64,000 bases of DNA from Mobula hypostoma. Its lineage: Eukaryota. Below the pieces are notes generated by a model. The model saw nothing but the letters and a program-made list of their open reading frames with translations. It did not search any database and was not told the DNA's origin. This document shows, piece after piece, positions 970 to 57,943 of this stretch (position 1 is the stretch's first letter; each line of letters starts with the position of its first letter). Made by a program: the position numbers and the translations under genes. The DNA lies in contig NC_086097.1 in the NCBI RefSeq assembly GCF_963921235.1, positions 149,854,001-149,918,000 on the forward strand, in the 5' to 3' direction.

Positions 970-2074
970 GTAGGGCAACTTGACCGTAAAGGGCAGTAAT
1001 CATGGTCTTGAGGTCCTACAGAACCTTGTATACTGAGCCACTGCCTGAAATGGTAAGCGAAGCACTTGCAATAATAATCTTCAAAAGGAAATCAATTAAA
1101 TAACTGAAAGGAGAAAGCTTGCAGATTTGTGGGACTGAACAGTGACTTAATAGATAAGTGTTTCAAAGAGAGTGCCTTTGTACTTTGGGATGTATCATTC
1201 TGTGATCCTTCGCCCCATAGTCTCCTCCTCTCCTCTCCTGAGAGCTCTCCCAATGATAGACAGGCAGCCTCCTTTACCTTGTTCATGCCTTCATTTGTGA
1301 AGTACAACACTTTTCCCAGCACACTAATTGACAACAGGAGTAGTGCTAGGGCAATTCTAGCCAAGTTGGGCATAAATGCAAACCTTGCAAGCAAGCACAT
1401 CAATAACTGTCACTCGTTACCAATTAGAAACGTCAAACGAAAATAACTCCAACCAAGGGCACATGGACTAGTTTTGCCATTTAGTTCTTCATCCAGGTGA
1501 GGTCAGCTAATTTATCAAAGACTTTATCTTCCCATATCTTCCCAAGAACCCATATCTTCCCGGTCCGTGTATCACAGTTTGAATTCATTAGACTACAGCC
1601 ACTAACTTGGGATGTAAAGTCCTTGTGATAAAAATGAAGTCAATGGCAAATGTGTGGAACATATTCCCTGTTAATTCATTCAGGCCCAATCAATTGATGT
1701 CTTTTGGAAGGTCTGGAACAATTCTTCTCAAAAACAGGTTCTGAGAATGACAGCAATGATAATATAACTTTATTCAACTTTAGACAGTAGGTTTGGAAAT
1801 AGTGGAACATCAATAATTGGTTTGTTTCTGCAGTGAAGCGTGAAAGAAGCCGATATGAACATTGAAGTAATCTATTCTCCTTCAACCCCTTCTGTTGCTT
1901 TGAATTTCCCATTTATCAACGTCTCCTTTAGTCGCTCTGGCTTCAAATATTGTGGAAGATTCCACAAACTCATTTTTATTTTGTTCTTCATTAGTCACCA
2001 ATGATCCTTGAAGACCTCAGTTGAGAAAATACCATGGATTTTTCCTCTTCACTCATAAGTGAATTGGGCAATTG

Positions 2075-2250
2075 GAGACACGAGACACTGCAGATGCTGG
2101 GATCTGGAGCAACAAACAAAATGCTGGAAGAGCTCACCGATGGGAATGGGGGAGGCATTGACGCAGAGTGTTGACCTAAATTTTGAGCGTTCCACAGCCC
2201 TCACGGATGCTGATTGACCTGCTGAGTCCCTCCAGAAAATGCTTTGTTGA
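2075..2250. repeat. Inverted pair of Penelope-derived terminal fragments
   Basis: ctgcagatgctgggatctggagcaac (minus) and gatgctgattgacctgctgagtccctccag (plus) both resemble the PLE end at 42180-42260. Confidence 0.6.
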
Positions 2251-2579
2251 ACTTAGTAAAATCAAGAGCAAAAATTAGAGATTGTGGGAAAGGGAAGGCA
2301 GTAGGGCTAACTGCGCAACCAGTGCAAGCAAAAGGCCCCAAAAGCTTCCTCCTGTAATGTATAATTCTGACCCATGAACAATTGGTTCTGAAGTAGCAAA
2401 ATTATGTTGTAGCTCATAATGCTAAAAATAGAGCCAGTATTTCTCTAGATGAGGTACGAAACTTAGTGGTATCAATTGTACAATACTTTGATCCTAGTAG
2501 AAAACTTGTTCCTAAGTTTTTGCTGATTTGGAAAGAATGGCGATTATTTGGACTAACCGTTGCTTTGTCATCTTTTTAG

Positions 2580-2773
2580 CGTTCCAAGGGGAATCGGAAG
2601 TATGGCACCAGAACTGCTTAGTGCAAACTACACCATGGAGTGTATGCTCCAAATCCTGTGGAATGGGGATTTCAACCAGGATTTCAAATGAAAACCATCA
2701 GTGTAAGATGGTGAATGAAAGACGCCTTTGTTACTTAAGGCCTTGCAACATTGACATTACCAAACATATCAAG
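2580..2773 (+). CDS. CCN4: CCN4 coding exon, TSP1 domain
   Basis: Branch point gactaac (2551-2557), tttttag acceptor, aag|gtaat donor. Encodes WHQNCLVQTTPWSVCSKSCGMGISTRISN...RLCYLRPC; frame is continuous with both neighbouring exons. Confidence 0.96.
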
Positions 2774-3917
2774 GTAATCTTCTTGGTCTTTATTAAGTTT
2801 ATCAAATTCTTATTCCGGGGACTCAGGGTGACCCCCTAAATAAAAGTATACCCATTACCTTGGTGATTGGGTTCTATGTGGAAGGAGTAGTACATCTTGA
2901 TAGGGTATTAAAGTCGAATTTGATTTGTGATTAACAATTGGATATAAAGTCTGCTTAATGTTCATCCCCCTCCAAATACCAAAGGCATCAAGTGTCAACA
3001 CATAGTGCTTAATCCTGGATTGCACAACCTTCTTGTGGACTCCAAACTGTGACAGAAAGACCACTCGCATGTGGCATTAGTTGTAATGGAATTGTTAATT
3101 TTGTCATGCTAGACTTTTAATATTTACTTTCTCTGCTTTTGTGTGTGAAGTATGCTGTTTGTGAAGTATATAAAAATTCTCCATAAAGCTTGACCTTCTA
3201 GGCTGCTCTGCTGGTAATTTAACAATGTTGGATTGTTTCCTTCAATTACAATTTGTAAGAAAATCATGAGCTTGTTTTTTGTGGCTAGTGGTAATTGGAG
3301 GAACATGATCACAATGAAAAAAGATGGAATGTTAATGAGGATATTTGTGAGTGGAGAGAGAGGAGGTACTTATTTTAACAAAACATAGCTGCCTTCAGAA
3401 TGCCTCTGAAGTGAAGTGTTTGCATGTACAGAGGATAGTTGGTGACAACATTTCAGTGCTGTAACTTTAGTTTACTGTGTAAATATACAGAAGCTATCTC
3501 TATTTTTCAAATGGAATAGAAAGCCTTCAGCAGTTAACTGGACATAAGTTTGCCTGTGGCACAGTTCCTAACCACTGCTTTATTGATCTAATTTTGAACT
3601 AAAAAGAGTTCATCTTGCACCCATTAATAATCTGATCTGAATATATGTGCATTCACAAAACAGAAACTCAACAGAACTAGAAATCCCCATACTAAAATGT
3701 ACTTGTAATACAGTAACATGAAAATATAAAAACAGAGACTCCCCAACTTTTTTCAAAGGCCCATTACTTTGAGACCAACTAACCTCGTCAGTTTAGTTTA
3801 CAATGCCGGAGCAGTGGATACAGGAAATAGCCTTATGAAAGGCATTGAAATGATCTCAGGTTTGGAATTGTGAATAAAATGACCAAGTTGAATATTTCTT
3901 GTTTGCTCTCCTTACAG

Positions 3918-4217
3918 GAGGGAAAGAGGTGCCTCAGTGTCCTGAAGCAGGTGGAACCCATAAACTTTACCTTGTCTGGGTGTGTGAGCCAACGCACATA
4001 TCGGCCCAAATACTGTGGCATCTGCACAGACGACCGATGCTGCACTCCCCAGAAATCAAAGACCATTGAGGTGAATTTTGACTGCCCTGATGGTCTGGGC
4101 TTCTCCAAGAACATGATGTGGATAAACTCCTGTTTCTGCACCCTAAGGTGCGAGAAACCAAATGACATCTTTGCAGATCTGTTGTATTATCCTGACTACT
4201 CTGAAATCGCAAACTAA
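3918..4217 (+). CDS. CCN4: CCN4 last coding exon, cystine-knot CT domain
   Basis: ccttacag| acceptor. Encodes EGKRCL...YRPKYCGICTDDRCC...WINSCFC...NDIFADL..YPDYSEIAN*; this C-terminus is diagnostic of WISP1. NDRG1 synteny agrees. Confidence 0.96.
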   Translation, partial: EGKRCLSVLKQVEPINFTLSGCVSQRTYRPKYCGICTDDRCCTPQKSKTIEVNFDCPDGLGFSKNMMWINSCFCTLRCEKPNDIFADLLYYPDYSEIAN

Positions 4218-4275
4218 GTGCTAAGAAGTGCATCCTTTTGACTAACTGCTGACAAGAATGGCAAGAATGCTGGAG

Positions 4276-4404
4276 AATAAATGCGATTTTGGCCTGAAGT
4301 AACAATGCAAATCATGTACCTGTCATCAATTGCCAGAAAGATACAGGTTCCATATCTCAGCTTTGAGGAATTATCATTCTTGACAAAATAAAATAAATTT
4401 ATTT
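4276..4404 (+). promoter_or_regulatory. Candidate CCN4 polyadenylation signals and AU-rich element
   Basis: AATAAA at 4276-4281, 4387-4392 and 4392-4397, followed by ATTTATTTA. Which site is used cannot be told from sequence. Confidence 0.4.
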
Positions 4405-5407
4405 AGTGAATTAGAATATTCAATAGAATATTTAAAGATATTATTTACTGAGGTGTTGCAAGTTCAGTCGGTTGATAGATAGCTGGTGTTCTAAAGTCTC
4501 TTTTTCAGATTTTCTCATTTGATACCAATCTGAGTATCGCAAAAAAGATACAAAAGTTAGGGGGAAAAAAATTCAAGCATCAACAAAGCAACTTCATTCC
4601 TTCCACGTTGAATTTAAACTGAACTGTTTTCCTCTGGTCAAATAAAGGATTAGGATCCAATGGCAATATTAATTTCCAAAGGTGTTAATTTTGGTTTGCT
4701 CATTCCACCTCTGTCTGCAAGACATCATGGGTTTCAAGCAGCACTCTAATGTAGCCATGGCAAGCCTCAGGCACATGCAAAAATTTGTTGGCATGCAGCA
4801 TGCAGTGCCATCAATTGATTCTTTAAACCCCATCCATAAATAAAAAAATACATAATTATCCTTACTGCCAAATGAAGCAGCAAATGTTTATAACAACCCA
4901 AGAACAGTGAGATATCTTCACAGTAAACTTCTCAAACTGGTTTGGTACCAACCGGATGGTTGCAAGAACACAGGACATTGGATAATACATTTTGAAATCC
5001 TCCCAACCTGGTATATACATCAGCATTTAGATGGTAAATGGTTAGAATAACAACACTCTTTAGATTAATAATAATAATTTTAGGAAGTTTTCTAAAATGC
5101 TTCATTTATTTCTGGCTGTCGGCTATACTTTTATTAATATTAAAACAACTAATATACATAAACAGGACATTATTTTTCCTTCAAGAAAGCTCATAATTAT
5201 TTTATTTATTCAGTAATCAGCAATACTCTCTGCATAAAATTACCATGGTGCTCAAGTTTTCAGAAGAATATTGCTATTTGGGCATACAATCTCAAAAACT
5301 TTTGCCACACCTGCTCTTGTGTGCACTGCAGGTTGCCATTTCACTGGGACAACGATGGACAAGAACACTGTAGAAGTGCTATTTTTCTTGTGAAATATCC
5401 AATATTT

Positions 5408-19931: not shown

Positions 19932-19983
19932 TATAGCCCATTCCTTGCACAAAATACTTCAGAGCTTCCGTAAGTTTTGCTGG
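19932..19983 (-). CDS. NDRG1: NDRG1 exon 15 (52 nt)
   Basis: PAKLTEALKYFVQGMGY; AG/GT flanks. Confidence 0.96.
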
Positions 19984-20236
19984 CTGTGAGAGAGTAAATT
20001 ATGTATTTAAAAAATAATCCATCATGATCATGGACTGAATATTTCCATAACGCTGCCAAGTTTAACTTCCGGGGACGGGGTGCAAGTCGGAATACTTCAG
20101 CACCAAGGACATGTTTCTAGAAATAACAGTACTAACAAAATGAATGCATATGGATCATTATATGCCAAAAACCTGACATGAATCATTGGCTTCCCTTCTA
20201 TTGCACACAGCTATGCCGGGGTCCTATTTGAGTGCA

Positions 20237-24759: not shown

Positions 24760-25275
24760 CGCAACACAAAAAATGCTGGTGAACGCAGCAGGCCAGGCAG
24801 CAACTATAGGAAGAGGTACAGTCAACATTTTGGGCCGAGACCCTTCGTCAGGACTAACTGAAAGAAGAGACAGTAAGAGATTTGAAAGTGGGAGGGGGAG
24901 GGGAAATCCGAAATGACAGGAGGGGGAGGGATGGAGCTAAGAGCTGGAAAGTTGATTGGCAAAAAGGATACGAGGCTGGAGAAGGGAGAGGATGATGGGA
25001 CGGGAGGCCTAGGGAGAAAGGGGGAGGGGGGAAGCCCAGAGGATGGGCAGGGAGTGAAAGGGACAGAGGGAGAAAAAGAATGTGTGTATATAAATAAATA
25101 AGGGTTGGGATATGAAGGGGAGGTGGGGTATTAACAGAAGTTCGAGAAGTCAATGTTCATGCCGTCAGGTTGGAGGCTACCCAGACGGAATACAAGGTGT
25201 TGTTCCTCCAACCTGAGTGTGGCTTCATCTTGACAGTAGAGGAGGCTGTGGATAGACATATCAGAATGGGAATGA
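24760..25275 (-). mobile_element. Penelope-like element 3' part with a CpG-decayed hammerhead (24819-24856)
   Basis: Closely similar to 40696-41230. Core CTGACGA is intact, but GAAA has become AAAA and CGTC has become TGTT. Confidence 0.88.
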
Positions 25276-33350: not shown

Positions 33351-33450
33351 TTTTTTCTTTTGATGAATTGCCCTGTAATTGATTGAAACTATCCAAAACA
33401 AACATAATTATTTAAAGATTAATGTAAAGAGAGATCCAGTGTTACTTTAC

Positions 33451-33554
33451 CTGTTGTACGAGTCAACAAACAGCTGAAGATTGTGATGATTAAGCCCAGT
33501 GGAGATGTGATTACGGTATGTCTGGATCAATTCAGGATTAGAATTTATTTCATC
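33451..33554 (-). CDS. NDRG1: NDRG1 exon 10 (104 nt)
   Basis: DEINSNPELIQTYRNHISTGLNHHNLQLFVDSYNS; AG/GT flanks. Confidence 0.94.
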
Positions 33555-36102: not shown

Positions 36103-39100
36103 CTAGGAGAAAATTGAAATTAAAATCATGCAGAACTGAATACTCAACTTTACACCTATTACTTTTCTCTCTGAAAACCAACCACTGAAAGATGTTTTGT
36201 AACACCTTATAGTAATCATAAAACAATGCACTAGTATAAGGCAATAGTAAGGGAATAAAGAGCAAATTCTTGAAGTTATTCAAACAAAGTCTTATAAAGT
36301 TTGATAAACAGTGGCACAGATTTTTAAAAGCTCATCCTTATGGCCAAAAACATTCAAAGTTCAAATTTGTTATCAAGGTTTCTTTTCAACCTTCTGTGTC
36401 AAGATGACACTGGTGACACATGGCAATGTTATGTGGGCAACTCACTAAACTACTAGATATACTTCTGAACTATGATCATCACAAAATACAGCATACATGT
36501 CACCCAGTTTGCTATTTCTCCATTTTTCAGCACCACACTTCAGAAAATTATCAAGTCTTGGAGACAAAATGATTTACCATGGCAAATAAGGGAGTTTTCA
36601 GTCATCTGGGGAATTTCCATAGAATTAGACAGTTAAATATACCTACTGTAAACTGGCAACCTGATCCACTACAAAGTACACCTACATCAGACTGGACAGA
36701 TGGTTGCTTTTGCTGTTTAATGATCCTTTCACCAATGCATAATTAATTTTGTTGTGTTACACACAGAAAATTAGATAATTGTCCTTCCAGTGGTCCCATC
36801 TTATTTATACATGTTAAAAATCTTGGACCTGTGTAGATTAGAATGCCAATTTTTTTTTCTTTTTTTAAATTACTCAAAACATGATCCAGATTGCTTTACT
36901 ATTGAACACTGTTGGCACCTTCTGGCTTCGCATGTAATTTTTTTTGAGAAAAAAAACTATTTTAAGAAGGAGGTGCATAGAAGAAACAAACAGCAAGGAA
37001 CAAATATGGTTCTTGAGGAGTACAAGAAATCCAAGAAAACACTGAGGAAATCAGGAGGGCTACAAGGGATGAGGTTGCTCTAGTAGCCAAGGTGAATGAG
37101 GATTCTAAAGGCTTCTGCAGATGCATTAAAAGCACAAGGACAATGTGACAGAATGTTGGCAATGCTAATTCAACTAACCTTGCCCCTTTGCCCAGTTAGT
37201 CACTCCTCCTCATTCTGCCCTTAGTCTAGTTTCCCCAGTAGTGCACACAGTTTGCTCTCCCATTCTGCAGTTCTTGGGAATTCACCATTTACACACCTAC
37301 CAAATGCTAACTCGACTAATCAAAACAATCCCTTCAGTTAAGGTGTTCTACTGGTTTGCAACTCAAAAATAAGGATTCCAGACACAGGCATTCCAAACAG
37401 TTTTTATTTTTACTCATACTGTTAAACCCCCAAGGGACCATTTGGGGTGTCCTAAAATAATGCCTGGGTTAGTGGGACAGGCACTATTCTTCTATATTCA
37501 TCGGAGCATGTGGACACCGATCCATGGGTTTAACTAAAGCATTTGTTGTGGAATAAATGTAGGATGTTAGAGTTGCCTAATTCTGCATCTGAATTAATTA
37601 TTATGGACTGGTCACTTGATCACACCCCCCCCCCCACCCCCAACCCCAGACCAACAGTAGAACTTCCTGTTCGTTCTAGGCCAGGTGGAGGCAGATTTAA
37701 ACACTTAATCTGGTTTTACGAGAGGTGTGGAGGTTGGATTTGACATTGATTAATAGTTATATTAGAAAGTTAAAGACTGTCGTGGAGAAAGCCTCTGCAT
37801 ATTGGTACGTACATGATTATTTTCATTTGTCTATTTGTAAATACTTTTTTCTTCACAACTTTTGGGCAGATTTTGCATTTTTTTCCACCTGGCACCAAAT
37901 AAAACTTCTTGCACTAACATGCTGTTGTGGCGTGCCATTTTTTTTTCAACTGGTGAGCCTATTCGGGCATGCTTACCCACACCTGGTGGCAAGGTATGAT
38001 ATTTGGTAGTACGGCACAAAATTGGTCCACTGGAAGATTAGAGCAGTCATCTATGTATGGAGCCTAAAGATACGGGGGAGAACTTAAATGGAATTTTTGT
38101 ATCTGTATTTACTCGGGAGACAGACACAGCATCTGTAGAAGTGGGGCAAAGTAGCAGTGAGGTCATGGACCATATAGAGATTACAGAGGTGTTGTTTGCT
38201 GTTTCGAGGAAAATTACGGTGGATAATTCCTAGAGCGTGACAAGATGTTCCCTCAAACCTTAAGGGAGGCTAGTGCAGAAATTGCAGGTGCCCTAGCAGA
38301 GATATTTAAAATATCCTTAACCATGGGTGAAGTGCCAGAATATTGGAAGATAGCTAATATTGTTCCATGTTTAAGAAAGGCTCTAGGAATAAGCCAGGAA
38401 ATTATCGACTACTGAGCCTGACATCAGTAGTGAGAAAGTTATTGGAAGGTATTCTAAGGGACCAGATATACAAGTATTTAGATAGGCAGAGTCTGATTAG
38501 GGATAATCAACATGGCTTTGTGCATGGTAGGTCTTTTCTTACCAATCTTAAGAATTTTTCCAAGTACGTTATCAAGAGAGTTGATGAAGGCAAGGCAGTA
38601 GATGTTGTTTACATGGACTTTAACAAAGCTTTTGAGAGGGTCTTGCATGGGAGGATGGTCAACAAGGTTCAGTCACTTAGCATTCAAGATGAGACAGTAA
38701 ATATGATGAGACATCGATTTCACAGGAGAAGCCAGAGAGTAATAGTAGATGGTTGCCTCTCTGACTGAAGCCCTGTGGCTAGTGATGTGCCACAGGGATC
38801 AGTGTTGGGTCTGTTCTAGTTTGTCATCTATATAACAAGCTAGGGGATAAAGTGGCAAGCTGGATTTGTAAATTTGCACCAAGTTTGGAGGTGTAGTGGA
38901 CAATATGGTTGACTATCAAAGCTTGCAGCGGGATCTGGAGCAACTGGGACATGGGCTGAAAAAAAAAAAATGGCAGATAGAATTTAATGCAGACAAGTGT
39001 GAGATGTTGCACTTTGGGAGTAAAAACCAGGGTAGGATTTACTTGCATGATTTGTGGTAGGGCACTGAGAAATGCAGTAGAATAGAGGTATCTGCGAATG

Positions 39101-40751
39101 CAGATCCATAATTCTTTGAAAGTGGTGTCACTGGTAGTTAGGGTTGTAAAGAAAGCTTTTGGCACATTGACCTTTATAAGTCAAAGTATTGAGTACAAGA
39201 GTTGGGATGTTATGACGAAGTTGTTAAAAAAAAAAGTTGGCGAGGCCTAACTTGAAGTATAGTGTGCAATTTCTGTCACCTAACTACAGGAAAGATATCA
39301 ATAAGATTGGAAGAGTGCAGAGAAAATTTCCAAAGATGTTGCAGGACTCTAGGACCTGAGTTATAGGGAAAGGATGAATAGGTTAGTACGTTATTTCCCA
39401 CAGCATAGAAGAATGAGGGGAAACTCGATAGAGAAATACAAAACTGTAAGAGGTATAACTAGGGTAAATACAAGCAGGCTTTTTCCACTGAGGTTGGGTG
39501 AGACTAGAACAATATGTCATGGGTTAAGAATAAAAGGTGAAATGGCTAAGACCATAAGACATGGGAGCAGAATTCGGCCATTTGGCCCATCGAGTCTACT
39601 CCGCCATTCAATCGTGGCCAATCCTTTTTTTCCTCCTCAACCCCATTTCCCGGCCTTTTCCCCATAATCTTTGATGCCATGTCCAGTCAAGAACCTATCA
39701 ATCTCTGCCTTATATACACCCAACGACCTGGCCTCCACATGGCAACAAATGCCACAAATTCACCATCCTCTGGCTAAAGAAATTTCTCTGCATCTGTTTT
39801 GAATGGATGCCCCTCTATCCTGAGGCTCTGCCCTCTTATCATAGACTCTCCCACCATGGGAAACACCCTTTCCACCTCTACTCTGTCTAATCCTTTCAAC
39901 ATTTTAAAGGTCTCAAGGAGATCCCCCCCTCATCCTTCTAAATTCTAGCCAGTAGAGACCCAGAGCCATCAAACATTCCTTTCATTCCTGGAATCATCCT
40001 TGTGAATCTCCTCTGGACCCTCTTCAATACCAGCACATCTCTTCTAAGATGAGGAGCCCAAAACTGTACACAATACTCAAAGTGAGGCCTCACCAGTGCC
40101 TTATAAAGCCTTAGCATCACATCCCTACACTTGTATTCTAGACCTCTTGAAATGAATGCTACATTGCATTTGCCTTCCTCACCACCAACTCAACCTGCAA
40201 GTTAACCTTTAGGGTATTCTGCACAAGGACTCCAAAGTCCCTTTGCATCTCAGAATTTTGGATTTTCTCCCTGTTTAGAAAATAGTCCACACATTTACTT
40301 CTACTACCAAAGTGCATGACCATGCATTTTCCAATATTATATTTCATTTGCCACTTTCTTGGCCATTCTCCTAATCCAAGTCCTTCTGCATCCTATCTGC
40401 CCCTCCACCAATCATTGTATCATCTGCAAACTTAGTAACAAAGCTATCTGTCTCATCATCAGCATAGATAGAAGTGGTCCCAATACTGAATCCTGCGGAA
40501 CACCACTAGTCATCTTAAGCCAACCAGGCAAGGATCCTTTTATTCCCACTCGCCACTTCCCTCCAATCAACCAATTGACCTAACTATTTTATTAACTTTC
40601 CTGTAATACCACAGGCTCTTAACTTGGTAAGCAGCCTCATGTGTGGCACCTTGTCAAAAGCCTTCTGAAAGACCAACTACGCAACATCCACTGTAACACA
40701 CATAAATATTGCTGGTGAACGCAGGCCACGCAGCATTTATAGGAAGAGATA

Positions 40752-40789
40752 CAGTCGACGTTTCGGGCCGACACCCTTCATCAGGACTA
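40752..40789 (-). ncRNA. Minimal type I hammerhead ribozyme motif, core intact
   Basis: UAGUC-CUGAUGA-A-GGG-UGUCGG-CCC-GAAA-C-GUC-GACUG. Confidence 0.75.
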
Positions 40790-42127
40790 ACTTAAAGAAG
40801 AGATAGTAAGAGATTTGAAAGTGGGAGGGGGAGGGGGAGATCCAAAATGATAGGAGAAAACAGGAGGGGGAGGGATGGAGCTAAGAGCTGGGAAGTTGAT
40901 TGGCAAAAGGGATATGAGAGGATCATGGGATGGGAGGCCTAGGGAGAAAGAAAGGGGGAGAGGGGAAGCCCGAGGATGGGCAAGGAGTATAGTGAGAGGG
41001 ACAGAGAGAAAAAGGAGAGAGAGAGAAAAAATTATATTATAATAAAAGGTAATTAACAGATGGGGTACGAAGGGGAGGTGGGGCATTAACGGAAGTTAGA
41101 GAAGTCAATGTTCACGCCATCAGGTTGGAGGCTACCCAGACGGAATACAAGGTGTTGTTCCTCCAACCTGAGTGTGGCTTCATCTTGACAGCAGAGGCGG
41201 CCATGGATAGACATATCAGAATGGGAATGGGATGTAGAATTGAATGTGTGGCCACTGGGAGATCCTGCTTCCTCTGGCGGACACAGTGTAGGTGTTCAGC
41301 GAAACGGTCTCCCACCCTGCGTTGGGTCTCGCCAATATATAGAAGGCCGCATCGGGAGCACCAGACGCAGTATATCACCCCAGCCGACTCATATCCCCCC
41401 CATCCCTTCCCACCGATCTCCCTCCTGGCACTTATCCTTGTAAGCGGAACAAGTGCCACACATGCCCTTACACTTCCTCCCCCACCACCATTCAGGGCCC
41501 TAGACAGTCCTTCCAGGTAAGGCCACACTTCACCTGTGAGTCAGCTGGGGTGATATACTGCGTCCGGTGCTCTCGATGCGGCCTTCTATATATTGGTGAG
41601 ACCTGACGCAGGCTGGGAGACCATTTCGTTGAACATCTAGGCTCTGTCCGCCAGAGAAAGGAGGATCTCCCAGTGGCCACACATTTTAATTCCACATCCC
41701 ATTCCGCAATGTCTATCCATGGCCTCCTCTGCTGTCAAGATGTAGCCACACTCAGGTTGGAGGAACAATACCTTATATTCCGTCTGGGTAGCCTCCAACC
41801 TGATGGCATGAACATTGACTTCTCTAACTTCTGTTAATGCCCCACCTCCCCTTTGTACCCCATCTGTTATTTATTTACCTTTTACTATTATATCATTTTT
41901 TTTCTCTCTCCTTTTTCTCCCTCTGTCCCTCACTATACTCCTTGCCCATCCTCTGGGGTCCCCTCCCCCCCCCTTCTTTCTCCTTAGGCCTCCTGTCCCA
42001 TGATCCTCTCATATCCCTTTTGCCAATCAACTTTCCAGCTCTTAGATCCATCCCTCCCCCTCCTGTCTTCTATCATTTTGGATCTCCCCCTCCCCCTTTC
42101 AAATCTCTTATTATCTCTTCTTTCAGT

Positions 42128-42165
42128 TAGTTCTGACAAAGGGTCTCAGCCCAAAACGTCGACTG
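42128..42165 (+). pseudogene. Inactivated hammerhead motif in the second Penelope arm
   Basis: tagtt-CTGACAA-a-ggg-tctcag-ccc-AAAA-c-GTC-gactg; G8 and G12 are both changed to A. Confidence 0.7.
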
Positions 42166-44178
42166 TACCTCTTGCTATAGATGCTGCCTGGCCTGCTGTG
42201 TTCACCAGCAATTTTTATGTGTGTTGCTTGAAATTCCAGCATCTGCAGATTTCCTCGTGTTAACATCCACTGTATCCCCTTTATCTATCCTATTTGTAAT
42301 TTCTCAAAGAATTCCAACAGGTTCGCCAGGCAAAATTTCCCCTGAAGGAAACCATGCTGACTTTGTACCATCTTGTCCCGCGTCACCAAGTACTCCATCA
42401 CCTCGTCCTTAATAATTGACTCCAACATCTTCCTAATCACTGAGGTCAGGCTAACTGGTCTACAATTTGTTTTCTGCTGCCTTCCTCCTTTTCTTAAAGA
42501 GTGGAGTGACATTTGCAATTTTCCAGTCCTCTGGCACCATGCCAGAGTCCAATGATGTTTGAAAGATCATTTCTAATGCCACCACAATCTCGAATGCTGC
42601 CCCTTTTAGAACCCTAGGGTGCAGTTCATCTGGTCCGGGTGACTTATGTACTTTTAGGTCTTTCAGCTTTTTGAGCACCTTCTCCTTCGTAATAGTAACT
42701 GCACTCACTTCTCTTCTTTCACACACTACAACATCTGGCACATTGCTAGTGTCTTCCACAGTGAAGACTGATGCAAAATACTCATTTAGTTCATCTACCA
42801 TCTCTTTGCCCCCCATTATTATTTCTTCTGCCTCATTCTCTAGCGGTCCCATATCCACTCTCATCTCTCATTTATTTATTTACTTGAAAAAGCTTTTACT
42901 ATCCACTTTAATATTATTTGCTAACTTGCTTTCATATTTCATCTCTTCCCTTCTGATTCTTTTAGTTGCTCTCTGTAGGTTTTTAAAAAACTTCCCAACC
43001 CTTTATCTTTTTGCTTTGTTGTATGCCCTCTCTTTTGTTTTTACATTAACTTTGACTTCCCTTGCCAGCCACAGTGGTACTATTTTGCCATTTCAGTACT
43101 TCTTCACTTTTGGAATACACATGTATTGCATCTTCCTCATTTTTCCCAGAAACACACGCCATTGCTGCTTTGCTGACATCCCTGACAGCAACTCCTTCCA
43201 ATTTACTTTGGCCAGCTGCTCTCTCATACCATTGTAATTTCCCTTACTCCACTGAAATACTGCTATATCAGACTTTACTTTCTCCCTATCAAAATTCAAG
43301 TTGAACTCAATCATATTAAGGGGAACTTCTTCAGAGATGGAACAAGCTGCCAGCAGAAACAGTGGATGCGGGCTTTGATTTCTACATTTAAGATATTTGG
43401 ATAGGTACATGCATGGGAGGGGGTATAAAGGGCTATGGCCTGTGTGCAGGTCAATGGGACTGGACGGATTAATAGTTCAGCATGGACTAGACAGGCTGAA
43501 GGATCTGTTTCTGTGCTATAGTGTCTGTGACTACGACGAAAACCAAGCCAATACAAACATCCTTTAAGGATCTAATATAGTCAGCAGATTATTACCCGAC
43601 TTCTGTCATGCTTGGATAACATTTTACTTATTTAGCACAGTATCCTTTTCTCTAGTGCCCTATTTATTATCAGTAACTCTTCCTCTACCATGCTTTTTAA
43701 TTGATGGAAGGAGATGGAATGTATAATGCTATCTTTCCTGAAGCCTGGCAACTCTCATTACTATATAGAAGAAGCAAATGCCTCAGGTTAAAACAGCCAT
43801 AACCATTCCCACCTCCACCATCACTCCACTTCCAATTTGACCTTAATATGAAGGTTGAATGAAAGAAGAAAAGTCCTAAATCTTCAACTTTTAAACACAA
43901 GTTGAGGCAGTGTGTCCCACTTCTATTAGTTTTCCACAATCTATTTCAGGGTTTCATACACTTGTACATTTTTCTAAAAATTAAAAACTATTTCGGAAAG
44001 TGCCGCTAATAGAATTACAACTATTAATGACGTTCTATACTTGGTGTAGTGTTCTATTTGTGTAGCATAACATACACAAATTACACCAGATTCACATGCT
44101 TTCATTTAAATATTTGGTATAATACAAGTAGTTCATGAAGTTAGAATTTACTGCCTAAAGCCTCCAGTCTTGTATTAC

Positions 44179-44265
44179 CTTAGTTGCTGCCCAGTCCATC
44201 CATCCTTCAGCATTGCAATTAATATTAATGAGACAGAGTCCTTCAACAAGATCAGGATAAGTCAA
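44179..44265 (-). CDS. NDRG1: NDRG1 exon 8 (87 nt)
   Basis: [29 protein letters not shown]; AG/GT flanks. Confidence 0.96.
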
Positions 44266-44428
44266 CTGGAAAAGAAAAAATTTGAAGTTTTTGCATTTTT
44301 GTTTTACTCTCAATGAAATGAGAATCAAATAAATAATTCTATTCAAACACAAGTTTTAATGAGAGCACCCAAGACTATGGCTAGCAACACCCACAAAGTT
44401 ACTATTATGGAAGTGGTGTCAAACTTAC

Positions 44429-44489
44429 AGCTAATCTGGTCAGGATATAAGCACCAGCTCCAACTCCTAATCCAATAATGCTCCTCAAA
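44429..44489 (-). CDS. NDRG1: NDRG1 exon 7 (61 nt)
   Basis: LRSIIGLGVGAGAYILTRLA, the non-catalytic nucleophile elbow of the NDRG alpha/beta-hydrolase fold; AG/GT flanks. Confidence 0.95.
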
Positions 44490-45173
44490 CTGAAAGAGAA
44501 ATTAGGCTGTTTTAGGCAACAGTTGAAAGAAGATGTTGGCTCCTAAAATTGGTCTAAGGTTCTTGTTGCTCTATACAAAGAATTAGTTAAAATACATCAG
44601 TGTTGTAAAGAAACAAAAGTACTTCTATTGCAGCATAGTAAAAACATACAATATAAATAAGGGTTTAACAGCAAGCTAGAATGTACTACGTTTTTATTAA
44701 GGGCGTTTCAAAATGAAACTATTCTGAATTATGGCCACATTGTTGGTGGAATAATTCAATGTGTACATTCACCTAGAAATTAGTCACCTACTTCTCTAGC
44801 TTTAAAACACTAGTCTCTTGAATATTGCTTTAAAAGACATAAAATATGTAAAGTTAGTACTAATTGCAAATCAAGACTGCAGAACTTCAAAGAATAACAG
44901 TATTGGACTTGGAAAAATATTGCCATTCCTTCATCACTGAGTATTAAATCCTATCCAACACAATACTTTTTCAAGATACATGGACAATAAATACCAACCT
45001 TAATATCACTACTCAATTCAAATAAAAAAGTACATTAAGAAAATTGCAAAGTGATGCATCAGTATTTTTATAAACAAATCAGTGACGGGCAAAAACTGCA
45101 GCATGTAACTAGGTTGCTGTTAATTGTATTATTGATTAAATGCATTATAGACATTGTAGGCTTATAGTCTTAC

Positions 45174-53720: not shown

Positions 53721-53877
53721 CAACCCTTCTAGGATATTCTCTTACCTCTGGAAAAGCCTGCCAGTTCTGTGATCATGGCTGTGCCTGGTCAATGTATGTG
53801 CTCTGTGCTGCATAGCACCAACAGTAACAAATTCATAAACCACTCATTATTTATATTACACGAGCAGTCATCCTTAC

Positions 53878-53998
53878 CCAGCTGGAAAAGATGAAGCTCC
53901 TTCATGCTGGCCCGGTAAATCAATATGGTAAATTGCAAAATGTAGTATTATTTCCTGCATGTCCTCGGAGTTGAAAAGAGTGTCAAAACATGATTTAT
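53878..53998 (-). CDS. NDRG1: NDRG1 exon 5 (121 nt)
   Basis: HKSCFDTLFNSEDMQEIILHFAIYHIDLPGQHEGASSFPAG; tttttacag and gtaagg flanks. Confidence 0.95.
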
Positions 53999-54589
53999 CT
54001 GTAAAAAGAACATATTTCAATGGCTACATAAGGTGGTTCAGATAATGCAGTTAATTTTACAAAGACCAATTGCTAGTGAACATTATTTAGTGTCTACCCA
54101 CAAAATTTGGGTAGAAAGCCACAAATGACTTCCCATTTGGAAAAAACTCTCAAAATACTTGTACCTGAAATTTTCCTAAATGCAAGGCAAATTGAGAACA
54201 AATTAACAAAAGTAAAAACAAGAGGGCTACTTTCATGAAACTTCATAAAGCTCAAGAACTTTCCAAATTATACAGTTAACTTTCCACTTCACTATAGCTA
54301 TTAAACAACAATGCCAAGAAATTTTAAATAATCCTCTGTTTTCAGCATTAAACCTTTTTCCATTCATCCTCTCCACACACCACAGGAACTAAAATAAGTC
54401 CATTTGCATCTTTCTATACACTCTGAATATTTAATCAAGCACATATTAGGCTTGTAGCTCTGATGCAATTCTCACATGATTCCTTATACAATGCCCTGCA
54501 GCATCAGAGACGGACATGTGCTTTTGATGTACTGGAACACATTCATTACGTGCTCCTAGGACAACATCTTTTGAACAGTTGCTCGGTCC

Positions 54590-57350: not shown

Positions 57351-57837
57351 TTCTAGGTTTCTTGTGGGAAAACTAATAGCAAGATTGTACAGTTTAAACT
57401 TTTTGACTTTTCATCCTTAGGTAATTTGGATTTTAGATACAGATACAATTTATCACAAAGAATTTGAATTCTGTAAAGTTTGAGACACAGCTCAAACAAG
57501 ATATATATTCAAAACTTTCATTCTTAACAGGGATTCGCAAACTCAGAAATGTGACCTACAAGTTCCCATAATATCAGTGGACAGCTCTGAAATATATCAC
57601 GCAGAACAAAATCCCATATTTCTAATATATCAAAAATTTTATACAACCTACTGAAAAGTATCTACACCAAGAAATTCATGTTTGGATAGGTACAATTAAA
57701 ATTGGTTCATCCAAATCTTAGAATAAGACCAATCCCAATTTGGCAAAAAGCTTGTTACAGTTTTCACCTGCAACTGCTAAATTTTTGAAAGACTGGAAGA
57801 ACTACCTGGATGGGTAGGCACTGCTTACACTACTTAC

Positions 57838-57943
57838 GATTCATCCCAATGTCATGAAGAGTGAGTAAGACTGGCCTAATTCCTTTAGATGCACCACGCA
57901 CTGCAACGCGAATAATACCAAATGGTGTTTCAACATCATGCTC
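57838..57943 (-). CDS. NDRG1: NDRG1 exon 4 (106 nt)
   Basis: EHDVETPFGIIRVAVRGASKGIRPVLLTLHDIGMN; ttcacag and gtaagt flanks. Confidence 0.95.

What the first reader, a model, noticed from the sequence alone, without database searches (positions are those of the whole stretch)
40752..40789. Core-intact minimal hammerhead ribozyme in the sense strand of NDRG1 intron 8
Seen: the minus strand reads UAGUC CUGAUGA A GGG UGUCGG CCC GAAA C GUC GACUG. All hammerhead core nucleotides are present (CUGANGA, GAAA, GUC triplet), with a 5-bp helix I and a 3-bp helix II. Helix III is only the palindrome ACGU, which cannot close in a monomer. Established: Penelope-like elements carry such minimal hammerheads, thought to cleave as dimers. 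Inference: NDRG1 is transcribed from this strand, so its pre-mRNA carries a potential self-cleavage site between 40757 and 40756. Cleavage would need a partner copy, either another transcript in trans or a distant copy. This is the only undecayed copy I found in the window.
Basis: partly seen in the sequence, partly recalled or inferred. Interest (0 to 1): 0.8.

Follow-up and report, generated by a model that had tools for sequence, protein, structure and literature searches.

The report
Penelope retrotransposon hammerhead relic in intron
The hammerhead motif is real and its core is intact, but it is the standard small ribozyme at the tail of a dead, truncated Penelope-like jumping gene, one of about 90,000 such motifs in this genome, and it probably does not cut the host gene's RNA.

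Summary
Window 40752-40789 (minus strand) carries a complete minimal type-I hammerhead: CUGAUGA, GAAA, an ACGU palindrome in place of helix III, C17, a 5-bp helix I and a 3-4-bp helix II. The predicted cleavage site lies between 40757 and 40756. It is the only core-intact copy in the window.

It is not special. It sits at the 3' end of a 5'-truncated Penelope-like element (PLE). That element inserted as an inverted pair (40695-42261) with a 12-bp target-site duplication into an older LINE. The LINE lies in an 8,076-nt intron of an NDRG1/NDRG3-type gene, on the sense strand.

The genome holds 89,846 core-intact motifs of this one family (reversed-pattern control: 284). It also holds full-length elements with a hammerhead in each flanking repeat around a reverse transcriptase + GIY-YIG ORF. 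This is the architecture published by Cervera & de la Peña in 2014.

No intact same-strand partner exists in the window. A computed fold pairs 36 of the 38 motif bases with the inverted arm. Published PLE hammerheads cleave poorly and need a dimer or the element's own protein.

The NDRG1 name and "intron 8" could not be confirmed. This scan has flagged the same family many times elsewhere in this genome. Verdict: a known kind, an ordinary transposon relic, low interest.

The parts
40752..40789 (-). Minimal type-I hammerhead (min-HHR) with an intact core. Helix I is 40789-40785 paired with 40756-40752. The predicted cleavage is 3' of C17, between 40757 and 40756.
   Evidence: It matches the published PLE min-HHR features (PMC4209133).
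40695..41391 (-). Arm A: a 5'-truncated Penelope-like element. It holds the frameshifted C-terminal GIY-YIG coding part, the 3' UTR/pLTR with the intact hammerhead, and the element's 3' end.
   Evidence: GIY-YIG Pfam hit E=0.003. About 86% identity to positions 4393-5091 of the full-length element L059. Other genomic copies end at the same base.
41394..42261 (+). Arm B: the inverted, 5'-truncated copy of the same element. Its hammerhead at 42128-42165 is decayed, and it runs a 30-36-nt 'tail' beyond arm A's end point.
   Evidence: 92% identity to arm A and about 86% to L059 4250-5121. Tail and inverted-copy architecture as in PMC8557442.
42262..42273 (-). Target-site duplication ACAGTGGATGTT, upstream copy on the minus strand.
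40683..40694 (-). Target-site duplication ACAGTGGATGTT, downstream copy on the minus strand.
39560..43400 (-). Older decayed LINE (CR1/L2-like reverse-transcriptase reading frame), split by the PLE insertion. Boundaries are approximate.
   Evidence: Weak RVT_1 hits on ORF pieces at 42288-42518 and 40415-40570. The RT reading frame continues across the insertion once one TSD copy is removed.
36103..44178 (-). The 8,076-nt intron of the NDRG1/NDRG3-type host gene that contains everything above.
   Evidence: Flanking exons 44265-44179 and 36102-36046 have AG/GT boundaries and join in frame with exon 33554-33451. Ndr Pfam exon hits are on the minus strand.
24788..24897 (-). A third, decayed PLE 3' end on the same strand in a downstream intron. 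Its hammerhead is dead: G12 to A (GAAA reads AAAA) and CGTC reads TGTT.

Best explanation
The motif is the standard minimal hammerhead ribozyme in the terminal repeat (pLTR, 3' region) of a Penelope-like retrotransposon (PLE).

**In a live element.** One hammerhead sits in each flanking repeat, about 3.5 kb apart on one transcript, roughly 60 nt upstream of the ORF start. The published, still unproven role is to trim unit-length element RNA out of longer transcripts. It would act as a dimer of two copies, helped by the element's own protein.

**This copy.** It arrived as part of a dead-on-arrival, 5'-truncated, inverted-pair insertion into a LINE inside an NDRG-family intron. Its 38 bases have escaped mutation by chance. 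Its sister arm and a third copy nearby have decayed.

**In the host pre-mRNA.** The copy is most likely inert. It has no intact partner on the same strand. It is predicted to be locked in a roughly 690-bp hairpin with the inverted arm, which is transcribed first. It is removed with the intron.

**Shown and inferred.** Shown: the motif, the element anatomy, the copy number and the host strand. Inferred: the lack of cleavage in vivo.
For: - **Motif.** It meets every published PLE min-HHR feature: a nucleotide between A9 and 10.1, G10.1-C11.1, palindromic 15.2/16.2, a 4-5-bp helix I (PMC4209133).
- **Element context.** A frameshifted GIY-YIG ORF lies just upstream. Intact versions in other copies carry a CxxxxCxxC linker followed by GIY-YIG.
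- **Insertion anatomy.** Inverted arms at 92% identity, a 12-bp TSD, and a 30-36-nt tail on one arm only. This is the PLE architecture described in PMC8557442 and PMC11167929.
[quoted passage not shown] Direct repeats 3516 nt apart are 99-100% identical.
- **Copy number.** 89,846 core-intact motifs against 284 for the reversed-pattern control. 53,853 lie within 3 mismatches of this 38-mer. This copy differs by one loop-II base from a variant with 716 exact copies.
- **Partners.** The two other copies in the window carry G12-to-A and other core changes.
- **Folding.** The MFE of the 1641-nt segment is -1248.5 kcal/mol, with 36 of 38 motif bases paired to 42128-42165. The double-hammerhead structure scores -18.5 kcal/mol, against -27.7 for an alternative dimer and 2 x -12.0 for two monomers.
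- **Literature.** Activity is low even as dimers (PMC4209133). The Anolis PLE hammerhead cleaves only with the PLE protein, and no RNA-seq ends fall at its site (PMC11167929).
Against: - No experiment or read-level RNA data bear on this copy. The only public runs available were assembled contigs dominated by repeats.
- MFE folding ignores co-transcriptional kinetics, helicases and proteins.
- The family appears to be active, with intact 1042-aa ORFs and 100%-identical repeats. The assisting protein could therefore be present in some cells.
- Thousands of identical motifs in other transcripts could in principle pair in trans.
- All copies sampled in this genome belong to one sequence family and show decay, not compensatory change. 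The helices are therefore not independently supported by covariation here.
Confidence: 0.88

Rival explanations
1. The intact sense-strand hammerhead does cleave the NDRG pre-mRNA at 40757/40756. It would pair in trans with identical motifs in other transcripts, or be assisted by protein from active PLE copies, and so lower or modulate the host gene's output.
For: - The core is fully intact and on the transcribed strand.
- The family has apparently functional copies.
- The Anolis PLE hammerhead is protein-assisted (PMC11167929).
- HHR-bearing retrozymes are under-represented in Xenopus introns (bioRxiv 10.64898/2026.07.22.740005).
Against: - No intact partner lies in cis.
- The motif is predicted to be sequestered in a long hairpin.
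- The catalytic dimer is not energetically favoured.
- Activity in vitro is low, and no cleavage ends are seen in Anolis RNA-seq (PMC4209133, PMC11167929).
- About 44% of Xenopus retrozyme copies still sit in introns, so intronic copies are tolerated.
- With about 90,000 intact motifs, widespread cleavage would be very costly.
Confidence: 0.06
2. The biologically relevant feature is the roughly 690-bp inverted repeat, not the ribozyme. In the intron it forms long double-stranded RNA that is edited by ADAR, processed into small RNAs, or affects splicing.
For: The arms are 92% identical over about 690 bp, and the predicted hairpin has an MFE of -1248.5 kcal/mol.
Against: No editing or small-RNA data could be obtained, because one search gave contigs only. 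Such fold-back PLE insertions are very common in this genome (one search lists many close inverted pairs). Any such effect would therefore be generic.
Confidence: 0.05
3. The motif is a chance match to a loose hammerhead descriptor and has no ribozyme ancestry.
For: No Rfam hammerhead model matches it, even when only 81 nt are searched at E<=10.
Against: - There are 0 hits in 50 shuffles of the window.
- The genome holds 89,846 copies against 284 for the control.
- The motif keeps a conserved position in both repeats of a full-length RT+GIY-YIG element.
- Rfam models require a helix III, which this published minimal class lacks.
Confidence: 0.01

Closest known systems
Minimal hammerhead ribozymes (min-HHR) of metazoan Penelope-like elements (Cervera & de la Peña 2014, PMC4209133; also Lünse, Weinberg & Breaker 2017, cited in PMC6765202 but not readable here)
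   Same: - Type-I topology with helix I open.
- CUGANGA/GAAA core.
- An unpaired nucleotide between A9 and 10.1.
- A G10.1-C11.1 pair.
- No helix III beyond a palindromic ACGU, which implies dimer action.
- A 5-bp helix I.
- Location in the PLE terminal repeat, with one motif on each side of the ORF in full-length copies.
- Massive genome-wide dispersal, mostly as single motifs from truncated elements.
   Different: - Helix II is short here (3 G-C pairs plus a U.G), against 6-8 bp in the Schistosoma and Drosophila examples.
- The copy number, about 90,000 core-intact motifs, is roughly ten times the largest counts reported in 2014 (about 4,000 in coelacanth and about 9,000 in Xenopus).
- Within this genome the motif is nearly invariant, one family, rather than highly variable.
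Poseidon PLE of Anolis carolinensis (PAc) and its hammerhead (PMC11167929)
   Same: - A vertebrate EN+ PLE with pLTRs.
- A hammerhead near the ORF start.
- Two adjacent reverse-transcription start sites that produce a 'tail'. This matches the two arm ends seen here, 30-36 nt apart.
   Different: - In PAc the ORF starts inside stem II. Here the ATG lies about 60 nt downstream of the motif (L059).
- This family carries a CxxxxCxxC linker before GIY-YIG. By the literature's criterion (PMC8557442) that points to the Neptune/Nematis type rather than Poseidon. This is an inference; no phylogeny was made.
Animal non-LTR retrozymes (PMC7229834; bioRxiv 10.64898/2026.07.22.740005)
   Same: They are hammerhead-bearing, PLE-related repeats, and many copies lie in introns.
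   Different: Retrozymes are short tandem units with canonical type-I hammerheads that yield circular RNAs. The window copy is a single dispersed 3' fragment of an autonomous PLE that still has coding remnants. It is not a tandem array.
Conserved intronic hammerheads of amniotes (HH9/HH10, Rfam RF02275/RF02277)
   Same: A hammerhead on the sense strand of a host-gene intron.
   Different: HH9 and HH10 are single-copy, conserved across species, have a full helix III and are active as monomers. This motif is a multicopy transposon relic, lacks helix III and matches no Rfam model.

Membership tests
PLE minimal hammerhead (min-HHR) | Conserved catalytic core C3 U4 G5 A6 N7 G8 A9 ... G12 A13 A14, an A15.1-U16.1 pair, and H17 | tested here: met
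   CUGAUGA at 40784-40778, GAA at 40764-40762, A15.1 at 40761, U16.1 at 40758, C17 at 40757.
PLE minimal hammerhead (min-HHR) | An unpaired nucleotide between A9 and 10.1, and a G10.1-C11.1 closing pair | tested here: met
   A at 40777. G at 40776 pairs with C at 40765. The criterion comes from PMC4209133.
PLE minimal hammerhead (min-HHR) | No stable helix III, with palindromic 15.2/16.2 that allows a dimer | tested here: met
   ACGU at 40761-40758 with no loop. The double-hammerhead pairing can be drawn and scores -18.5 kcal/mol.
PLE minimal hammerhead (min-HHR) | Short open helix I (4-5 bp), type-I topology | tested here: met
   UAGUC pairs with GACUG: 5 bp including one U.G.
PLE minimal hammerhead (min-HHR) | Location in the terminal repeat of an element that encodes RT plus GIY-YIG | tested here: met
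   In the window, a GIY-YIG remnant lies about 300 nt upstream. In the full-length relative L059, a hammerhead sits in both direct repeats around an RVT_1 + GIY-YIG ORF.
PLE minimal hammerhead (min-HHR) | Helices supported by compensatory changes among copies | tested here: inconclusive
   The 48 sampled copies are one sequence family. Their variation is decay, much of it at CpG sites, with no compensatory pairs.
PLE minimal hammerhead (min-HHR) | Site-specific self-cleavage as a dimer or with protein | not testable with these tools
   This needs a cleavage assay. The public runs gave contigs only.
Rfam hammerhead families (types I, II, III, HH9, HH10) | A score against the covariance model | tested here: not met
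   No hammerhead hit at E<=10 in 7 kb or in 81 nt. This is expected, because those models include helix III.
Penelope-like element (EN+) | A single ORF with a reverse transcriptase followed by a C-terminal GIY-YIG endonuclease | tested here: met
   L059 ORF 1571-4699: RVT_1 at residues 533-695 (E=3.8e-5) and GIY-YIG at 945-1019 (E=1.1e-3). Both fall below Pfam's curated cut-offs. The window copy keeps only a frameshifted GIY-YIG part.
Penelope-like element (EN+) | pLTR direct repeats, frequent 5' truncation, an adjacent inverted 5'-truncated copy, and a 30-40-bp tail at one end | tested here: met
   Direct repeats 3516 nt apart in L059. In the window, inverted arms, a tail on arm B only, and a 12-bp TSD. 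Criteria come from PMC8557442.
Non-LTR retrozyme | Tandem array of short units, each with a canonical type-I hammerhead | tested here: not met
   There is no tandem arrangement. Only one intact motif exists in the window.

The most novel reading that the evidence does not exclude
This genome has an apparently active PLE family and about 90,000 core-intact hammerheads. The PLE protein might assist cleavage, or trans-mobilisation, at sense-strand intronic copies such as this one. Bursts of PLE expression would then cut many host pre-mRNAs, including this NDRG gene.
Probability: 0.05. Interest if true: 0.6.

Novelty: already known. Interest (0 to 1): 0.1.

Why it matters
For this locus it matters little. 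The motif is a routine by-product of a transposon insertion and should be annotated as a PLE fragment, not as a feature of the NDRG gene.

The genome-level picture is of more interest. One PLE family has left about 90,000 intact minimal hammerheads, and apparently live copies remain. That makes this genome a good system for a question still open in the literature: whether PLE hammerheads cleave in vivo, and whether intact sense-strand copies in introns carry a cost.

Tried and rejected
- **Rfam cmscan** on 7 kb and on 81 nt found no hammerhead model hit. This does not count against the motif, because the minimal class lacks helix III.
- **RNA evidence.** The look-up of sequencing runs returned only Logan contigs, and their RNA status is a guess. 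Laying four runs on 40000-42400 gave thousands of short repeat-derived pieces and joints from other genomic copies. It gave no molecule ends and no piece spanning the stretch. It is uninformative for cleavage or expression.
- **Covariation among genomic copies.** All sampled copies are one family, with no compensatory changes.
- **Fuzzy-regex scan for decayed copies** timed out. It was replaced by blastn-short.
- **L048.** The long minus-strand ORF next to one copy is a neighbouring LINE-type RT, not the PLE. A true full-length PLE was then found as L059.
- **Paralogue naming.** Summed phmmer bits over five exons are 177 for human NDRG1 and 184 for NDRG3, which does not decide. No GTRSRSHTSE-type repeat was found in the window.
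- **Lünse et al. 2017** (PMC5785218) is not held in the library.
- **Supplements of PMC4209133** are not held.

Full report
**1. The observation**

The minus strand of window 40789-40752 reads UAGUC CUGAUGA A GGGUGUCGGCCC GAAA CG UC GACUG. In standard hammerhead numbering:
- C3-A9 = 40784-40778.
- There is an extra A at 40777.
- Helix II has G10.1-C11.1 plus two more G-C pairs and a possible U.G, closing a GUCG loop.
- G12 A13 A14 = 40764-40762.
- A15.1 C15.2 G16.2 U16.1 = 40761-40758.
- C17 = 40757 and G1.1 = 40756.

Helix I is 5 bp (UAGUC with GACUG, including one U.G).

A descriptor scan of both strands finds only this hit and none in 50 shuffles. The 28-mer is unique in the window at up to 3 mismatches. 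No Rfam hammerhead model matches, even when only 81 nt are searched. That is expected for a motif without helix III.

**2. What surrounds it**

About 300 nt upstream on the same strand is a frameshifted reading frame. It contains ...GVIYCVWCSRCGLLYIGETQRRVGDRFAEH... and ends ...LRLEEQHLVFRLGSLQPDGVNIDFSNFR*. It gives a weak GIY-YIG match (E=0.003).

The stretch 40695-42261 is a pair of inverted copies:
- Arm A is 41391-40695 on the minus strand.
- Arm B is 41394-42261 on the plus strand.
- The arms are 92% identical over about 690 bp.

Arm B's hammerhead (42128-42165) has decayed to CUGACAA...AAAA. Arm B also runs 30-36 nt further than arm A at its outer end.

The whole pair is flanked by a perfect 12-bp direct repeat, ACAGTGGATGTT, at 42273-42262 and 40694-40683. 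It interrupts the reverse-transcriptase frame of an older LINE on the minus strand.

Four features here match the published signature of Penelope-like element (PLE) insertions (PMC8557442, PMC11167929):
- 5' truncation.
- An adjacent inverted truncated copy.
- A 30-40-bp tail at one end.
- A target-site duplication.

**3. The family in the genome**

Copy numbers:
- The window's exact 38-mer occurs 3 times, and its 28-mer 15 times.
- 53,853 sites lie within 3 mismatches (reversed-pattern control: 0).
- The core-only pattern CTGANGA-N10-18-GAAACGTC occurs 89,846 times, against 284 for the control. That is about one per 39 kb.

The first hundred listed sites all belong to one sequence family. Its main forms are CTGACGAAGGGTCTCGGCCTGAAACGTC and CTGATGAAGGGTCTCGGCCCGAAACGTC. 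The latter has 716 exact 38-mer copies. The window copy differs from it by one loop-II base.

In 48 copies with flanks, helix I is TAGTC/GACTG in 30. The remainder show single decays, not compensatory changes.

Other copies have intact C-terminal frames with a CxxxxCxxC linker followed by GIY-YIG. More than 91,000 first-look candidates match the protein, and many have open frames of 1,000 aa or more at 98% identity.

One such copy, L059, shows the full organisation:
- A hammerhead at 1483-1509.
- An ATG-initiated ORF at 1571-4699 (1042 aa), with RVT_1 at residues 533-695 and GIY-YIG at 945-1019.
- A hammerhead at 4999-5025.
- Direct repeats 3516 nt apart that are 99-100% identical.

This is the canonical pLTR-ORF-pLTR Penelope-like element with a hammerhead in each repeat, as described by Cervera & de la Peña (PMC4209133).

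The window's arms are about 86% identical to L059. The window insertion is therefore an older member of the family.

**4. The host gene**

Pfam Ndr exon hits lie on the minus strand at window 57815-57943, 53877-53999, 44423-44497, 44023-44274, 33450-33551 and 19933-19995.

Three exons have AG/GT boundaries and join in one frame:
- Exon e, 44265-44179.
- Exon f, 36102-36046, a small exon found by pattern.
- Exon g, 33554-33451.

The hammerhead therefore lies in the 8,076-nt intron 44178-36103, on the sense strand, as claimed.

Against solved human proteins, the five exons sum to about 177 bits for NDRG1 and about 184 for NDRG3. The paralogue name is unsettled and the intron number could not be checked.

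**5. Would it cut the pre-mRNA?**

A minimal hammerhead needs a second copy to build helices I and III.
- The only other same-strand copy in the window (24788-24897) has G12-to-A and further changes.
- Arm B is on the other strand, and it is also decayed.

In the transcript, the antisense of arm B is made first. The MFE fold of the 1641-nt segment (-1248.5 kcal/mol) pairs 36 of the 38 motif bases with 42128-42165.

For two isolated 38-mers, the energies are:
- Double-hammerhead pairing: -18.5 kcal/mol.
- An alternative duplex: -27.7 kcal/mol.
- Two separate monomers: -24.0 kcal/mol in total.

The literature points the same way:
- Metazoan PLE min-HHRs show no monomer activity and low dimer activity, mostly at non-physiological Mg2+ (PMC4209133).
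- The Anolis PLE hammerhead cleaved only when the PLE protein was added. No RNA-seq reads began or ended at its site (PMC11167929).

Public runs for this genome were available only as contigs and were swamped by repeats, so they say nothing either way.

**6. Verdict**

- It is an ordinary relic of a very abundant, known class of transposon-borne ribozyme.
- Its intactness is chance survival in one of three local copies.
- Its most likely fate is to be sequestered in a hairpin and spliced out with the intron.

Earlier notes of this scan show that the same family has been flagged repeatedly elsewhere in this genome. Those notes also call the animal a devil ray, which I did not verify.

The residual novel possibility is protein-assisted cleavage of host introns in a genome with an active PLE family. 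The strand-bias and end-mapping analyses listed under the next steps can test it.

Noticed in passing
whole genome (G000); About 89,846 core-intact PLE minimal hammerheads of essentially one sequence family (control 284). That is roughly ten times the largest per-genome counts given in the 2014 description (about 4,000 in coelacanth, about 9,000 in Xenopus).
   Followed up: partly
L059:1483-5025 (G000:C5:53877000-53883000): An apparently intact full-length Penelope-like element: a 1042-aa ATG-initiated ORF (RT + GIY-YIG) between 99-100% identical direct repeats, each with a hammerhead. Many further copies have open frames of 1,000 aa or more at 98% identity. The family looks recently or currently active.
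   Followed up: partly
G000:C1:109236-109334, 1088319-1088431, 1935495-1935575, 2546808-2546871: Pairs of intact hammerheads on opposite strands only 36-85 bp apart. The minus-strand copy comes first and the plus-strand copy second, the same head-to-head layout as the window's arms but with extreme 5' truncation. These are mini fold-back PLE tails.
   Followed up: no
window 24788-24897 (-): A third PLE 3'-end fragment in a downstream intron of the same gene, on the same strand. Its hammerhead is dead (GAAA reads AAAA and CGTC reads TGTT).
   Followed up: yes
window 40695-42261: In the sense transcript the two arms should form a roughly 690-bp, 92%-matched double-stranded RNA hairpin with a loop of about 143 nt. 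This could be a substrate for RNA editing or small-RNA processing. It could not be tested.
   Followed up: no
window 40788 joined to 42143 (table 5): In all four laid runs, one contig joins 40788 to 42143 with CATGAA between the two sides. It most likely comes from another genomic copy with much shorter inverted arms, not from this locus.
   Followed up: no
window 19933-57943 (-): The host gene scores about equally as NDRG1 and NDRG3 against human solved structures. Four NDRG-family loci exist in the genome, on C1, C2, C40 and C55.
   Followed up: partly
L059 1571-1611, and window 42226-42261: Arm B's 'tail' matches the first ~36 nt after the usual insertion end in the full-length element. That stretch covers the ATG and the start of the ORF. 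This fits two alternative reverse-transcription start sites, as reported for the Anolis PLE.
   Followed up: partly
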